Part shown: piece by piece, positions 364-7,399 of the stretch
Position numbering within the stretch: position 1 is the first letter of the stretch
How the letters are laid out: every line of letters begins with the position of its first letter
Sequence record: ON529853.1
DNA: 64,000 nucleotides
Reading direction: 5' to 3' (one strand)
Position numbers and translations under genes: made by a program
The notes under the pieces: model-generated
Told to the model about the DNA's origin: nothing
Database searches by the model: none
What the model saw: only the letters and a program-made list of their open reading frames with translations

Positions 364-444
364 TGGCGGGGGCGGAGGGAATCGAACCCCCTGGTTGACG
401 CCTTCGGAGGGCGTTGCCTACATTCCGGTCGGCACTTCGCCCCC
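364..444 (-). tRNA. trnR: tRNA-Arg(CCG)
   Basis: Cloverleaf; anticodon arm ACGCC-CTCCGAA-GGCGT; TTCGATT T-loop; encoded CCA. Confidence 0.9.
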
Positions 445-5317: not shown

Positions 5318-5628
5318 CAGAGATTCGCCATCCACTGCTTGCGGCAGCGGGTGTGGTCCTTCCAGGACTTGCCGCCGGGACGCGACGCCATGAGGTCGTC
5401 GTAGGACGACGGCAGGACCATCCGGCGGCCACGGGCGCGGTAGAGGCGGTCGTGGGCTTCGCCGGTGTTGCGACGCCGCTCCTGCATGGTGCGGGGGCAG
5501 CGATGCATGTAGCGCCAGCGATGGCGGAAACGCCGGCAGCGGTAGGGCTCGCCGGGCTCCAGGTAGAGGACGCGCCAGCCCACGAAGTAGAAGCCGGTGT
5601 GGGTGACGCGTTCAAATTGGGGCTTCAT
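5317..5628 (-). CDS. Small basic Arg-rich protein at the end of tRNA array 2
   Basis: AGGAGG RBS; C-terminal LPSSYDD...KSWKDHTRCRKQW. Confidence 0.75.
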   Translation of the reverse strand: MKPQFERVTHTGFYFVGWRVLYLEPGEPYRCRRFRHRWRYMHRCPRTMQERRRNTGEAHDRLYRARGRRMVLPSSYDDLMASRPGGKSWKDHTRCRKQWMANL

Positions 5629-5728
5629 GACAGCCTCCTGCTAGGTTGAGTACCTAGCGGGTGCTGTATTCCAGGTAGAATTTGATCATGGCCGCATCCT
5701 ATCTCAAGCGGGGCGGTTCGTCGAGGAA

Positions 5729-5817
5729 TGGCGGATGGGGCAGGGATCGAACCCGCGTAACCCTCTCGGGTGTCGACCGCTTAGCAAGCGGCTGCCTTAC
5801 CTCTCGGCCACCCATCC
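5729..5817 (-). tRNA. trnS: tRNA-Ser(GCT)
   Basis: GCCGC-TTGCTAA-GCGGT; long variable arm; CCA. Confidence 0.93.
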
Positions 5818-5824
5818 GGGGTGA

Positions 5825-5909
5825 TGGCGGTGCGCCAGGGAATCGAACCCTCAACCTTGCGGTCGGCGACGGTTTTCAAGGCCGCTTGTCCCCATGGACG
5901 CTGCACACC
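5825..5909 (-). tRNA. trnS: tRNA-Ser(TGA)
   Basis: Loop CTTGAAA; long variable arm; CCA. Confidence 0.85.
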
Positions 5910-5914
5910 AAAGA

Positions 5915-6005
5915 TGGCGGACGGCACGCGATTCGAACGCGTGGGACCCAGGGGGTCCGCCTGCTTTCCAAGCAGGTGCCTTAAGCCGGGCTCAGCCAGC
6001 CGTCC
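5915..6005 (-). tRNA. trnS: tRNA-Ser(GGA)
   Basis: CCTGC-TTGGAAA-GCAGG; CCA. Confidence 0.92.
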
Positions 6006-6010
6006 GGTCT

Positions 6011-6228
6011 TGGTGGAGGCGAGGGGATTCGAACCCCCGTAGACGCCGAACCCCCGCATTACCGAGGGCCGATCTCAGGTTTAGAACGCGTGTGCCGTCC
6101 TGACCATCTTCCGCAGGCCAGGAGGTCTATCGTAACGACCCCGTCGATCGGTTGCCTCTGCGTCCCGGATTTACCCGGACCGTTGTTCTGTTCCACGGTG
6201 CTCATGCCGAAACCCGAGCGACGCCCCC
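6011..6228 (-). ncRNA. Short tmRNA-like RNA with Ala-type acceptor (218 nt)
   Basis: 5' GGGGGCG pairs with 3' CGCCTCC-A-CCA (G3.U70); canonical T-arm; structured insert of over 100 nt; no canonical tag frame. Confidence 0.65.
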
Positions 6229-6238
6229 GTGAAGGAAA

Positions 6239-6326
6239 TGGAGGATGGTGTGGGATTCGAACCCACGGAACCTTGCGGTCCTCCGGCTTTCGAAACCGGC
6301 GCGATCGGCCACTCCGCCAACCATCC
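6239..6326 (-). tRNA. trnS: tRNA-Ser(CGA)
   Basis: CCGGT-TTCGAAA-GCCGG; CCA. Confidence 0.93.
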
Positions 6327-6333
6327 AGAACAG

Positions 6334-6522
6334 TCAGGCCGAGGCCGGACTGTAGTTGTCGATGTCGTCGACCCGGATCGCCGTGCCCGCCGCAATCTGG
6401 CGGTCGGCGCTCAACAGGTCGGCGACCAGGTCGTCGGCCGAGACGGCGGTGCCGAGGGTGGCGAACTTCACGTTCACCAGGCGGCCGTCCGCAAACATCT
6501 CGTCGATCGCGGCGCGATCCAT
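6334..6522 (-). CDS. Hypothetical protein inside tRNA array (62 aa)
   Basis: AAAGGT RBS; fills gap between tRNAs. Confidence 0.7.
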   Translation of the reverse strand: MDRAAIDEMFADGRLVNVKFATLGTAVSADDLVADLLSADRQIAAGTAIRVDDIDNYSPASA

Positions 6523-6555
6523 GATAGACCTTTCTGCCGGACGCGCCGGCGGTGA

Positions 6556-6626
6556 TGGTGGAGACAGTGGGGCTCGAACCCACCAAGGCGTCCTTGCAAA
6601 GGATGCCTGCGCCCTGCGCTGTCCCC
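6556..6626 (-). tRNA. trnA: tRNA-Ala(TGC)
   Basis: CATCC-TTTGCAA-GGACG; G3.U70; CCA. Confidence 0.9.
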
Positions 6627-6663
6627 GTAGGGGTTGATCGTCAGCCATGCTGACAACCATTGT

Positions 6664-6739
6664 TGGTCCTGGCACTCAGATTCGAACTGAGCCATCGTGC
6701 TCCACAAACACGCGCCTCCACCGCAGAGGCTTTACCAGG
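6664..6739 (-). tRNA. trnH: tRNA-His(GTG), no G-1, A73
   Basis: CGTGT-TTGTGGA-GCACG; CCA. Confidence 0.9.
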
Positions 6740-7328: not shown

Positions 7329-7399
7329 TGGTGCCAAGGGAGGGAGTCAAACCCTCGCTGAACCCATACCAAGGGCTCGACCGATCACCCGGCCTTGGC
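7329..7399 (-). tRNA. trnT: tRNA-Thr(GGT)
   Basis: AGCCC-TTGGTAT-GGGTT; CCA. Confidence 0.8.

What the first reader, a model, noticed from the sequence alone, without database searches (positions are those of the whole stretch)
6011..6228. 218-nt mini-tmRNA-like RNA: Ala-type acceptor, no recognisable tag
Seen: acceptor GGGGGCG/CGCCUCC-A-CCA with G3.U70 and a canonical T-arm, as in the tmRNA tRNA-like domain. A long P2-like helix (UCGGGUUUCGGCAU/AUGCGGGGGUUCGG, plus ACCG/CGGU) encloses several hairpins. It is one-piece, whereas alphaproteobacterial tmRNA is permuted and two-piece, and it is far shorter than typical tmRNA. No frame gives an ANDN...AA-type tag; the most plausible internal frame ends ...MVRTAHAF*. 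It lies inside the attenuated array 2. Inference: a rescue RNA that frees stalled ribosomes without a degradation tag, or an SmpB/AlaRS decoy.
Basis: partly seen in the sequence, partly recalled or inferred. Interest (0 to 1): 0.72.

Follow-up and report, generated by a model that had tools for sequence, protein, structure and literature searches.

The report
Alanine-type tRNA-like RNA of huge phages
A conserved 218-base RNA gene sitting among the tRNA genes of a giant Brevundimonas phage looks like an alanine tRNA whose side arm has grown into a large knotted domain; it belongs to an undescribed RNA family found only in phages with genomes above about 270 kb, and its job (probably in or around ribosome rescue) is still unknown.

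Summary
The feature is real. The window is the jumbo phage vB_BpoS-Bambus. On the minus strand, 6228 to 6011 has a perfect 7-bp acceptor stem with G3.U70, A73, an encoded CCA and a canonical T-arm. It lies 10 and 5 nt from two tRNA-Ser genes. It is unannotated and 95-100% identical in seven related phages, matching or exceeding most neighbouring tRNAs.

I found five diverged homologues of 179-219 nt in tRNA arrays of 277-608 kb IMG/VR phage contigs. Across all 12 sequences, 28 of 58 pairs changed on both sides.

This covariation supports a tRNA-like fold:
- a true D-arm;
- an anticodon-arm-like hairpin with an oversized purine-rich loop;
- a 110-140 nt structured domain at the variable-arm position.

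It is not a tmRNA. ARAGORN finds nothing. Rfam tmRNA scores 21-32 bits against a threshold of 47. The D stem is absent from tmRNA, and no peptide frame is conserved. Bambus also carries a canonical, unannotated two-piece tmRNA elsewhere.

A stop triplet (UAA or UGA) is conserved beside a segment complementary to the hairpin loop.

Most likely it is processed like a tRNA and charged with alanine. A role in tag-less rescue or as a decoy is inferred only.

The parts
6011..6228 (-). Whole RNA gene, 218 nt. The 5' G is at 6228 and the 3' CCA ends at 6011.
   Evidence: Pattern match unique in the window. My covariance model and the Rfam tmRNA model both place homologues at exactly analogous ends. 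The gene is 95-100% identical in 7 phages.
6222..6228 (-). Acceptor stem, 5' strand GGGGGCG (element 1-7).
   Evidence: 7/7 pairs. G1-C72, G2-C71 and G3.U70 are invariant in 10/10 distinct sequences. Pairs 4, 5 and 6 covary in other lineages.
6200..6219 (-). D-arm (element 10-29): 4-bp stem GCUC/GAGC, with a loop ending in the conserved YUCGGCA that holds the GG.
   Evidence: The stem covaries among lineages: GCUC/GAGC, GCCU/AGGC, GCCA/UGGC.
6179..6199 (-). H1, an anticodon-arm-like hairpin (element 30-50): 5-bp stem and an 11-nt purine-rich loop, GGAACAGAACA.
   Evidence: 4 of its 5 pairs have double-sided changes. The loop is 9-13 nt in every lineage and is never a 7-nt anticodon loop.
6165..6178 (-). 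H2 hairpin (element 51-64) with the conserved loop GGUAAA(U/A).
   Evidence: 3 of its 4 pairs have double-sided changes and all cells are paired.
6156..6164 (-). L1 closing helix, 5' strand (element 65-73). It pairs with 6042-6050.
   Evidence: All 5 pairs of the core covary. L122 uses the entirely different GCAGCUAG/CUGGCUGC.
6140..6151 (-). L2/L2b helix, 5' strand (element 78-89). It pairs with 6069-6079.
   Evidence: Bambus has CCGAUC..CGGG / CCUG..GAUCGG. L234 has a continuous 10-bp UGGAUUUGGG/CCUAAGUCCA. L122 has UGGAA..GGG/CCC..UUUCA.
6095..6125 (-). H3 hairpin (element 104-134). Its sequence varies while the hairpin is kept.
   Evidence: U-A, C-G and U.G covary at 106/131 within the Bambus group. 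L122 has an unrelated 11-bp hairpin at the same place.
6078..6087 (-). Block GUUCUAAACC (element 142-151). GUUCU is complementary to the H1 loop; UAA follows, and CC pairs in L2b.
   Evidence: The block is identical in all seven Brevundimonas-phage copies (Bambus group), L234 and L122. Other lineages keep a loop-complementary segment followed by UGA or UAA.
6051..6068 (-). H4 hairpin (element 161-178) with loop GGUAAUGC, the most conserved internal motif of the family.
   Evidence: 164/175 covaries as U.G, U-A and C-G, and 165/174 as C-G and U.G. The motif CCCUUGGUAAUGCU.GGGU picks out exactly the 5 IMG/VR members.
6042..6050 (-). L1 closing helix, 3' strand (element 179-187), followed by the 3-nt linker UAC.
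6022..6038 (-). T-arm (element 191-207): 5-bp stem and T-loop UUCGAAU.
   Evidence: All cells are paired and 2 pairs covary. The T-loop is identical in all 12 sequences.
6011..6021 (-). Acceptor 3' strand CGCCUCC, discriminator A and CCA.
   Evidence: CCA is encoded in Bambus-type sequences, L234 and L122. The ends are ACAA or ACAG in L342, L285 and L381.

Best explanation
The element is a stable RNA gene of a previously undescribed family, about 180-220 nt long, carried in the tRNA arrays of huge phages.

Its core is a tRNA(Ala)-like cloverleaf:
- a 7-bp acceptor stem with G3.U70 and A73;
- a true D-arm;
- a T-arm with a standard T-loop;
- a hairpin at the anticodon-arm position.

Two things set it apart from a tRNA:
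- The 'anticodon' loop is an oversized purine-rich loop of 9-13 nt.
- The variable region is a conserved 110-140 nt structured domain: a closing helix, a three-way junction, a variable hairpin and a conserved GGUAAUGC hairpin.

A pyrimidine segment inside that domain, directly followed by UAA or UGA, is complementary to the hairpin loop and probably ties it into a pseudoknot.

Inferred steps:
- It is transcribed with the neighbouring tRNAs.
- It is cut out by RNase P and 3' trimming.
- It is given or keeps CCA.
- It is charged with alanine by the host AlaRS.

It has no conserved reading frame, so it is not a messenger in the tmRNA sense.

The least certain inference is its role. It most likely engages the translation machinery as an alanine-charged tRNA or tRNA-like-domain mimic. 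That could mean a tag-less way of relieving stalled ribosomes, perhaps with peptidyl-RNA hydrolysis, or modulation of trans-translation alongside the phage's own canonical two-piece tmRNA.
For: Shown:
- Exact tRNA-like ends and spacing. The spacers to the flanking tRNA-Ser genes are 10 and 5 nt, and all array tRNAs also encode CCA.
- Nucleotide conservation of 95-100% across seven phages, against 54-78% in intergenic DNA, 50-85% in coding sequence and 60-100% in tRNAs when compared with Gurke and Kikimora.
- Five diverged homologues, all inside same-strand tRNA arrays of 277-608 kb phage contigs.
- Covariation on the 12-sequence model alignment. 91.6% of cells are paired. 28 of 58 pairs changed on both sides, against 12.7 +/- 2.2 in shuffles (0/500) and 4-10 when partners are slid.
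- G1-C72, G2-C71, G3.U70 and A73 are invariant while other stems covary.
- My model of the family also aligns genuine tRNAs end to end. The best is a phage tRNA-Ala at 34.5 bits.

Inferred from established knowledge:
- G3.U70 is the major AlaRS identity element.
- Acceptor and T-arm minihelices are RNase P and CCA-enzyme substrates.

Context:
- The phage encodes a CCA-adding enzyme, a PTH2-type peptidyl-tRNA hydrolase, SerRS and RtcB.
- It also carries a canonical permuted tmRNA.
Against: - There is no direct evidence of transcription, processing or charging. The one read-laying run showed only DNA-like contigs of relatives.
- Folding energy is only weakly better than shuffles: z = -1.67 for the whole RNA and -2.0 for the insert.
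- The pseudoknot is not statistically established. Loop shuffles that keep composition give p = 0.06-0.6 per lineage and about 0.1 combined.
- The alignment used for pair counts was fitted to a model derived from these sequences.
- A translation-related role is an argument from resemblance and gene context only.
- Three lineages do not encode the full CCA.
Confidence: 0.6

Rival explanations
1. It is a true miniature tmRNA. It is alanylated, enters stalled ribosomes with SmpB, and the ribosome resumes on a 4-5 codon internal frame ending at the conserved UAA or UGA, adding a very short tag that does not target the protein for degradation.
For: - A stop triplet is present at the homologous spot in all 12 sequences: UAA in four lineages and UGA in L342 and L285.
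- An in-frame Ala or Gly codon lies 4-5 codons upstream in each lineage: AHAF, GHPKF, GETLF, ATSL, ARGSS (my reading).
- Tags as short as 2 residues are reported for bona fide tmRNAs (PMC11915505).
- The Rfam tmRNA model aligns the exact element ends.
- The 3' third resembles the acceptor piece of Caulobacter-phage tmRNAs (nhmmer E = 0.002-0.03). Shared k-mers with their coding pieces exceed shuffles (p = 0.003-0.03).
Against: - The peptide and its nucleotides are not conserved. I chose the Ala/Gly-codon window after seeing the data.
- A covarying D stem and H1 occupy the space where SmpB sits on tmRNA (PMC3968760).
- The candidate resume codon abuts a hairpin instead of following a spacer.
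- The segment before the stop triplet is complementary to the H1 loop.
- Rfam scores of 20.9-31.9 fall below 47. ARAGORN finds nothing even at relaxed thresholds.
- The same phages already have a canonical tmRNA with an ...LLAA tag.
Confidence: 0.12
2. It is a decoy. A tRNA-like-domain mimic titrates host SmpB, or AlaRS or EF-Tu, to shut down or re-route host trans-translation, as proposed for the RNA of mycobacteriophage DS6A that consists of the tRNA-like domain only.
For: - Published precedent: a DS6A-like molecule strongly inhibits tmRNA, perhaps by titrating SmpB (PMC4131195; PMC11915505).
- The acceptor and T-arm are invariant.
Against: - The phage keeps its own canonical tmRNA, which a general SmpB sponge would also starve.
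- A decoy would not need a conserved, covarying internal domain of 110-140 nt.
- The D stem and H1 fill the SmpB site (inference).
Confidence: 0.12
3. It is a tRNA-shaped RNA with a role outside translation. It might be bait or an inhibitor for host tRNA-cleaving defence nucleases, or a partner of the phage's Ro60/Rsr-RtcB RNA-repair module, in the way of a Y RNA.
For: - It sits in a tRNA array, of a kind often thought to counter tRNA-targeting defences (general knowledge).
- Bambus encodes a Ro60/Rsr orthologue with TROVE and vWA domains, as well as RtcB and an RNA ligase.
- Weak YrlA-like hits occur in Bambus and in L285.
Against: - A separate YrlA-like candidate lies next to rsr (32.6 bits).
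- The element itself gives no YrlA hit, and its ends form an acceptor stem, not a Ro-binding stem.
- The full Ala identity set and the CCA are kept invariant, which points to aminoacylation.
Confidence: 0.1
4. It is a decoding tRNA, or a tRNA precursor with an intervening sequence that is spliced out.
For: - The D stem GCUC/GAGC, A26 and the T-arm resemble the Gurke tRNA-Ala.
- With two extra pairs the Bambus-type H1 loop could be read as a 7-nt loop, AACAGAA (my inspection).
Against: - The H1 loop sequence and length differ among lineages (9-13 nt), so no anticodon is conserved.
- ARAGORN with introns allowed, and on versions with the insert deleted, gives no credible cloverleaf.
- The insert is too small for a group I intron, and no ribozyme family matches.
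- The insert is conserved as strongly as the tRNA-like parts.
Confidence: 0.03
5. It is a decaying remnant of a tRNA or tmRNA gene, or chance.
For: The array contains degenerate tRNA-like stretches that ARAGORN does not call.
Against: - It is 95-100% conserved where intergenic DNA is 54-78%.
- Compensatory changes occur across five or more lineages.
- Zero chance matches are expected.
Confidence: 0.02

Closest known systems
tmRNA (Rfam RF00023 standard; RF04321/RF01849 permuted, two-piece)
   Same: - Ala-type acceptor with G3.U70, A73 and CCA.
- T-arm.
- A long helix leaving the core just 5' of a 3-nt linker and the T-arm, where tmRNA helix H2 'mimics a long variable arm' (PMC3968760).
- A large structured body, possibly with a pseudoknot.
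- Encoded next to tRNAs.
- The acceptor sequence GGGGGCG/CGCCUCC is identical to that of Caulobacter-phage tmRNAs.
   Different: - It has a real, covarying D stem and an anticodon-arm-like hairpin.
- It has no conserved tag frame.
- It is 180-220 nt long, against about 300-440 nt for the tmRNAs found here.
- It scores below the Rfam threshold and is invisible to ARAGORN.
- It coexists with a canonical permuted tmRNA in the same genomes.
tmRNA forms reduced to the tRNA-like domain or lacking a coding sequence (mycobacteriophage DS6A; jakobid and oomycete mitochondria; some plastids)
   Same: They are alanine-type tRNA-like molecules without a recognisable tag frame. One is phage-encoded and reported to inhibit tmRNA (PMC4131195, PMC11915505).
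   Different: Those are 'little more than the TLD', about 65 nt in plastids. This family carries a conserved 110-140 nt domain and keeps the D and anticodon-like arms. I did not compare sequences with DS6A.
Class II tRNAs (long variable arm) and tRNA-Ala
   Same: - Cloverleaf order of the arms.
- U8/G10-type D-arm with GG, and T-loop UUCGAAU.
- The extra domain emerges at the variable-arm position.
- The D stem and A26 are identical to the Gurke phage tRNA-Ala.
- It shares processing context with tRNAs.
   Different: - The variable region is 110-140 nt instead of up to about 20.
- The loop of the anticodon-like arm is 9-13 nt with no conserved anticodon.
- tRNA finders do not call it.
YrlA (bacterial Y RNA-like, RF02553)
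   Same: It is a tRNA-like module joined to another structured module. The phage encodes the partner protein family, Ro60/Rsr.
   Different: In YrlA the RNA ends form the Ro-binding stem and the 'acceptor' is closed by a loop. Here the ends form an open acceptor with CCA. There is no Rfam hit on the element, and a separate YrlA-like candidate lies beside rsr.
Stable RNAs of unknown function in the phage T4 tRNA cluster (species 1 and 2; recalled from memory, not checked here)
   Same: They are non-tRNA stable RNAs encoded in, and processed from, a phage tRNA gene cluster.
   Different: No sequence or structure comparison was made. This is a lead only.

Membership tests
tmRNA | Acceptor stem with G3.U70, discriminator A73 and a 3' CCA (alanine identity) | tested here: met
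   7/7 pairs with G3.U70 and ACCA. G3.U70 occurs in 10/10 distinct family sequences. CCA is only partly encoded in 3 lineages.
tmRNA | tRNA-like T-arm with a T-loop | tested here: met
   A 5-bp stem and UUCGAAU in all 12 sequences.
tmRNA | Reduced D-loop without a stem, leaving room for SmpB in place of the D and anticodon stems (PMC3968760) | tested here: not met
   A 4-bp D stem covaries as GCUC/GAGC, GCCU/AGGC and GCCA/UGGC. A 5-bp hairpin follows at the anticodon-arm position.
tmRNA | mRNA-like domain: a resume codon and a tag reading frame ending in a stop codon, conserved among relatives | tested here: not met
   Only a stop triplet (UAA or UGA) is conserved. The in-frame upstream codons differ completely among lineages. 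A frame of 4-5 codons cannot be excluded.
tmRNA | Pseudoknot PK1 upstream of the frame, and helix H2 linking the tRNA-like domain to the body | tested here: inconclusive
   An H2-like closing helix (65-73/179-187) is well supported. The pseudoknot between loop and target is compatible in all lineages but is not significant against shuffles.
tmRNA | Reaches curated detection thresholds (Rfam gathering score; ARAGORN) | tested here: not met
   RF00023 scores 31.9, 31.9, 28.4, 22.0 and 20.9 bits against 47. ARAGORN finds none, even at -ps80. As a positive control, the canonical Bambus tmRNA scores 57.9 bits with RF04321.
tmRNA | Binds SmpB and EF-Tu and acts in trans-translation | not testable with these tools
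   This needs biochemistry.
tRNA (RF00005) | Cloverleaf with a 7-nt anticodon loop and a variable region of at most about 20 nt | tested here: not met
   The loop is 9-13 nt and differs among lineages. The variable region is 110-140 nt. ARAGORN with introns or deletions gives no credible call.
tRNA (RF00005) | Acceptor, D-arm (GG in the loop) and T-arm able to form the tRNA elbow | tested here: met
   My family model aligns genuine tRNAs end to end at 16-35 bits.
YrlA / Y RNA | The 5' and 3' ends pair to form the Ro-binding stem, and the sequence matches RF02553 | tested here: not met
   The ends form an acceptor stem with a free CCA. No YrlA hit lies on the element at E up to 10.
tmRNA consisting of the tRNA-like domain only (DS6A type) | [quoted passage not shown] | tested here: not met
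   A conserved internal domain of 110-140 nt is present. No direct comparison with DS6A was made.

The most novel reading that the evidence does not exclude
The RNA is a self-decoding, SmpB-independent rescue RNA. The hairpin at the anticodon-arm position is pre-paired in cis with an internal 'codon' segment that is immediately followed by a stop codon, UAA or UGA in all 12 sequences. Charged with alanine, the molecule would enter the empty A site of a non-stop ribosome as a ready-made tRNA-mRNA complex and accept the nascent chain. After translocation it would present its own stop codon to a release factor, freeing the protein with a single added alanine. The tandem repeat of the complementary motif in the loop would allow two registers; the repeats are GAAC-A-GAAC, AAGAC-AAGAC and AGGA-A-AGGA. 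This would be an RNA-only counterpart of tmRNA-SmpB and a plausible evolutionary intermediate between tRNA-Ala and tmRNA.
Probability: 0.08. Interest if true: 0.95.

Novelty: new variant of a known kind. Interest (0 to 1): 0.72.

Why it matters
Huge phages are known to carry tRNAs, tmRNA, SmpB and translation factors. The standard tools ARAGORN, tRNAscan and Rfam miss this RNA, and the paper describing these very phages reported that no tmRNA was detected.

Three things follow if the family is real:
- A conserved, alanine-type tRNA-like RNA with a large knotted domain, found so far only in phages above about 270 kb, adds an unrecognised player to phage control of host translation.
- It keeps D and anticodon-like arms while carrying a tmRNA-like body. 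That makes it a natural test case for how tmRNA could have arisen from tRNA-Ala, and for whether ribosome rescue can work without a tag or without SmpB.
- It can be tested directly, because Bambus and its environmental host Brevundimonas pondensis are in culture.

Tried and rejected
1. My own pattern error. They could not have found it. I therefore make no claim about JGI metagenomes. The corrected pattern worked.

2. Laying reads showed only contigs of Gurke- or Papperlapapp-like relatives in soil and wastewater runs, and low even depth in an 'RNA' virome. It gave no information on RNA ends.

3. tRNA with an intron or a group I intron was rejected.

4. I looked for a long tag frame. GCA ACC ... 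UUC UAA (24 codons) and the short GCA CAC GCG UUC UAA look tempting because the canonical Bambus tag also starts GCA CAC. Neither is conserved in homologues.

5. I tested derivation from the phage's permuted tmRNA by re-permutation.
   - Best local alignments of the interior are not individually significant (p = 0.03-0.7).
   - Shared k-mers are enriched (p = 0.003-0.03).
   - The 3' third aligns weakly to acceptor pieces.
   - This suggests shared ancestry but does not prove it. The shared motifs are also in a different order.

6. Protein-anchored retrieval through the neighbouring phosphatase found no further copies.

7. Looser motif scans of IMG/VR and GTDB genomes gave only chance matches.

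8. A pseudoknot shuffle test was not significant.

9. The Y-RNA idea is weakened because a separate YrlA-like candidate lies next to rsr.

10. blastn with the diverged members against isolated phages found nothing beyond the seven Brevundimonas phages.
Full report
WHAT IS THERE

The window is the last 64 kb of the record of Brevundimonas phage vB_BpoS-Bambus (ON529853.1, 348 kb, Dolichocephalovirinae). Window 5600-6700 equals record 289700-290800 at 100% identity.

The finding lies on the minus strand, from 6228 down to 6011.
- The 5' end GGGGGCG pairs 7/7 with CGCCUCC, including G3.U70.
- Discriminator A and CCA follow.
- Just upstream of the 3' strand is a 5-bp T stem with T-loop UUCGAAU.
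- A pattern joining these features matches once in the window and never in 100 shuffles.

The element sits 10 nt downstream of tRNA-Ser(CGA) and 5 nt upstream of tRNA-Ser(GGA), on the same strand. This is the spacing seen between tRNAs of the array, and all of those tRNAs also encode CCA.

It is unannotated in Bambus and in six relatives. The genome paper states that ARAGORN detected no tmRNA (PMC10070969).

CONSERVATION

The 218 nt are 98% identical on average across the seven phages. Against the two most distant, Gurke and Kikimora, the figures are:

| Region | Identity |
|---|---|
| The element | 95.0% and 96.3% |
| Neighbouring tRNAs | 60-100% |
| Intergenic DNA | 54-78% |
| Coding sequences | 50-85% |

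The whole length, not only the tRNA-like ends, is under strong nucleotide-level constraint.

TESTS AGAINST KNOWN FAMILIES

- ARAGORN finds no tmRNA or tRNA here. That holds at relaxed thresholds, with introns allowed, and after removing the insert.
- No Rfam family reaches its threshold.
- The standard tmRNA model gives 31.9 bits against a threshold of 47. In Bambus it chooses an internal, mismatched 5' strand.
- In homologues the same model aligns the exact ends I propose, at 31.9, 28.4, 22.0 and 20.9 bits.

A CANONICAL tmRNA IN THE SAME PHAGE

A blastn search with the element hit the T-arm and acceptor of unannotated loci in Caulobacter jumbo phages. Rfam identifies those loci as permuted two-piece tmRNAs: CcrColossus scores 83.8 bits and CcrBL10 82.2 bits. 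They carry NDND...AA-type tags and lie between tRNA-Cys and tRNA-Met.

Bambus has the syntenic gene outside the window.
- It lies at record positions about 212405-212662, minus strand.
- RF04321 scores it at 57.9 bits.
- Its acceptor is GGGGCCG/CGGCUCC.
- Its tag reads AHNDNFAAGERVLLAA.

All seven Brevundimonas phages carry both genes. The element is therefore a second gene, not the phage's tmRNA.

HOMOLOGUES ELSEWHERE

My first two collection scans contained a spacing error: six Ns instead of five. They could not have found the element, so I make no statement about the metagenome collection.

Corrected and motif-based scans of IMG/VR were followed by nhmmer and a covariance model. The last scan, with the most conserved internal motif, returned exactly five members and nothing else. 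The five members:

| Locus and strand | Length | Contig size |
|---|---|---|
| L234:3022-3240(-) | 219 nt | 543 kb |
| L122:9668-9882(-) | 215 nt | 608 kb |
| L342:1474-1665(-) | 192 nt | 436 kb |
| L285:9569-9757(-) | 189 nt | 277 kb |
| L381:121-299(+) | 179 nt | 455 kb |

- All five lie in tRNA arrays on the tRNA strand.
- In the two loci I compared with Bambus (L122, L234), almost no proteins are shared. The five loci have 43-54% G+C against 66% for Bambus.
- No copy turned up in one genome per GTDB species with a strict motif. Looser motif hits were chance.
- Among isolated phages, only the seven Brevundimonas phages have it.

Every known member is in a phage genome or contig above about 270 kb.

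STRUCTURE

On the model-based alignment of all 12 sequences (10 distinct), the pair counts are:
- 91.6% of cells are standard pairs.
- 28 of 58 pairs show changes on both sides, against 12.7 +/- 2.2 in shuffles (0 of 500 reach it).
- With partners slid by one to three columns, the count is 4-10.

Caveat: the alignment was fitted to a structure derived from these sequences.

An independent helix-by-helix check in three lineages gives the same picture. The numbering below counts from the 5' G.

| Element | Positions | Notes |
|---|---|---|
| Acceptor | 1-7/208-214 | |
| D stem | 10-13/26-29 | GCUC/GAGC, GCCU/AGGC, GCCA/UGGC |
| H1 | 30-34/46-50 | |
| H2 | 51-54/61-64 | loop GGUAAA |
| L1 closing helix | 65-73/179-187 | entirely different sequence in L122 |
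| L2/L2b | 78-89/150-160 | |
| H3 | 104-134 | variable hairpin |
| H4 | 161-166/173-178 | loop GGUAAUGC |
| Linker | 188-190 | 3 nt |
| T-arm | 191-207 | |

It is broken by a G-to-A change in three close relatives, and it competes with the covarying D stem and H4. It is not supported.

WHAT KIND OF MOLECULE

The order of the arms is that of a tRNA cloverleaf. The D-loop carries the GG, the T-loop is canonical, and one A separates the D stem from H1. The D stem, that A and the T-arm resemble the Gurke tRNA-Ala. My family model aligns genuine tRNAs end to end, with a tRNA-Ala scoring best.

Two things are not tRNA-like:
- The H1 loop is 9-13 nt, purine-rich and different in each lineage.
- The variable region is a structured domain of 110-140 nt.

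In tmRNA the D-loop has no stem. SmpB occupies the place of the D and anticodon stems, while helix H2 mimics a long variable arm (PMC3968760). This RNA has an H2-like helix at that position but keeps both stems. It stands between tRNA-Ala and tmRNA in architecture and fails membership of either family.

TAG OR NO TAG

In Bambus the stretch after H3 reads GCA CAC GCG UUC UAA.
- The block GUUCUAAACC is invariant in the Bambus group, L234 and L122.
- The nucleotides upstream differ completely among lineages.
- The in-frame peptides are AHAF, GHPKF, GETLF, ATSL and ARGSS.

There is no evidence of coding constraint and no degradation-type C-terminus.

What is conserved is this:
- a pyrimidine segment complementary to the H1 loop: AGAAC or GGAAC with GUUCU, AAAGAC with GUCUUU, and AGGAA with UUCCU;
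- directly after it, UAA or UGA (RAA once its first U is counted in the pairing);
- then CC, which pairs in L2b.

The loop usually holds the complementary motif twice in tandem.

The three substitutions in the loop within the Bambus group all keep pairing through wobble. However, shuffling each loop while keeping its composition gives p = 0.06-0.6 per lineage and about 0.1 combined. The pseudoknot is therefore plausible, not established. The triplet could be a structural junction or a real stop codon, and the data do not decide.

RELATION TO THE PHAGE tmRNAs

- The acceptor GGGGGCG/CGCCUCC and the 3' trailer match Caulobacter-phage tmRNAs.
- The last 40-55 nt align weakly to their acceptor pieces (E = 0.002-0.03).
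- Short motifs of the interior recur in canonical coding pieces more than in shuffles: GGAACAGAA, GGCAACCGAUC and GACCUCCUGGC (p = 0.003-0.03).
- They recur in a different order, and single local alignments are not significant.

Common ancestry with tmRNA is possible but unproven. The other lineages show no such similarity.

HOW IT MOST LIKELY WORKS

Shown: it is a conserved, structured, tRNA-shaped gene embedded in tRNA arrays, with an invariant alanine identity set.

Inferred from established rules:
- It is co-transcribed with the tRNAs.
- RNase P cleaves at G1.
- The 3' end is trimmed, and CCA is kept or added. The phage encodes a CCA-adding enzyme.
- AlaRS charges it, because G3.U70 suffices even in minihelices.

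Inferred with low certainty: the alanylated RNA engages the translation apparatus. I see three concrete options:
- Tag-less relief of stalled ribosomes, with the peptidyl-RNA then hydrolysed. The phage encodes a PTH2-type hydrolase.
- A very short tag read from the internal segment.
- Titration of SmpB, AlaRS or EF-Tu, as reported for the DS6A RNA that consists of the tRNA-like domain only (PMC4131195, PMC11915505).

The presence of D and H1 arms, of a canonical tmRNA in the same phage, and of a large conserved domain all argue against a simple SmpB sponge.

LIMITS

- There is no expression or charging data.
- There are only 12 sequences, 10 of them distinct.
- The metagenome collection was not validly searched.
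- The interior between L2b and H3 is aligned poorly in the shortest members.
- The function is unknown.

Noticed in passing
Outside the window: ON529853.1 about 212405-212662, minus strand (locus L020 12405-12662): Bambus carries a canonical permuted two-piece tmRNA (RF04321, 57.9 bits; tag AHNDNFAAGERVLLAA) between tRNA-Cys and tRNA-fMet. It is unannotated, and the genome paper reports that none was detected. All seven Brevundimonas jumbo phages have it.
   Followed up: yes
L010 1168-1461 (CcrColossus), L011 1168-1486 (CcrBL10), and about 35 Caulobacter phage records: Permuted tmRNA genes (82-84 bits) with NDND...AA-type tags lie between tRNA-Cys and tRNA-Met. This holds across phiCbK-like, Colossus-, Poindexter- and Bertely-virus genomes. 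No feature is annotated under them in the GenBank records.
   Followed up: partly
L020 15065-16450 (BAMBUS_03890) and L020 17011-17123, minus strand: The 'RNA-binding protein' is a Ro60/Rsr orthologue, with TROVE at 2.6e-12 plus vWA domains. About 560 nt upstream lies a YrlA-like (Y RNA) candidate at 32.6 bits, E = 3e-4, below threshold, together with two further weak tRNA-like hits. L285 also has a YrlA-like hit in its tRNA array.
   Followed up: partly
window 5828-5910, minus strand: This is a tRNA-Ser(UGA)-like gene with a long variable arm. ARAGORN does not call it, and it is annotated only in Domovoi. Rfam tRNA-Sec scores it at 30.6 bits, and locus tag BAMBUS_04630 is skipped in the record.
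   Followed up: partly
window 6556-6626, minus strand: The Bambus-group tRNA-Ala(UGC) is only 71 nt, with a shrunken D-arm (GCGC-AGG-GCGC). Gurke and Kikimora have a canonical 76-nt tRNA-Ala at the same place, only 59.5% identical. I have not explained this.
   Followed up: no
window 7329-7399 and 364-444, minus strand: These are tRNA-like stretches hit by my tRNA-shaped model (19.8 and 22 bits) that ARAGORN does not call. The first lies in the gap where Gurke and Kikimora have extra tRNA-Leu and tRNA-Lys genes, so they may be decayed tRNA genes.
   Followed up: no
Bambus record outside the window (loci L017-L020): The phage carries a large translation and RNA-repair toolkit:
- a PTH2-type peptidyl-tRNA hydrolase (BAMBUS_01810);
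- a CCA-adding enzyme (02180);
- seryl-tRNA synthetase (02640);
- a 250-aa protein with only a sub-threshold class II synthetase core (02870);
- tRNA-His guanylyltransferase, RtcB and an RNA ligase.
   Followed up: partly
H1 loop: window 6184-6194 (element 35-45) and the homologous loops in L342 and L381: The loop holds a tandem repeat of the motif complementary to the internal target: GAAC-A-GAAC, AAGAC-AAGAC or AGGA-A-AGGA. Two pairing registers are therefore possible in most lineages. I have not explained this.
   Followed up: partly
L009 7094-7530: An unrelated IMG/VR phage contig (83 kb) carries a standard one-piece tmRNA of 437 nt (100.2 bits) that ARAGORN missed.
   Followed up: no
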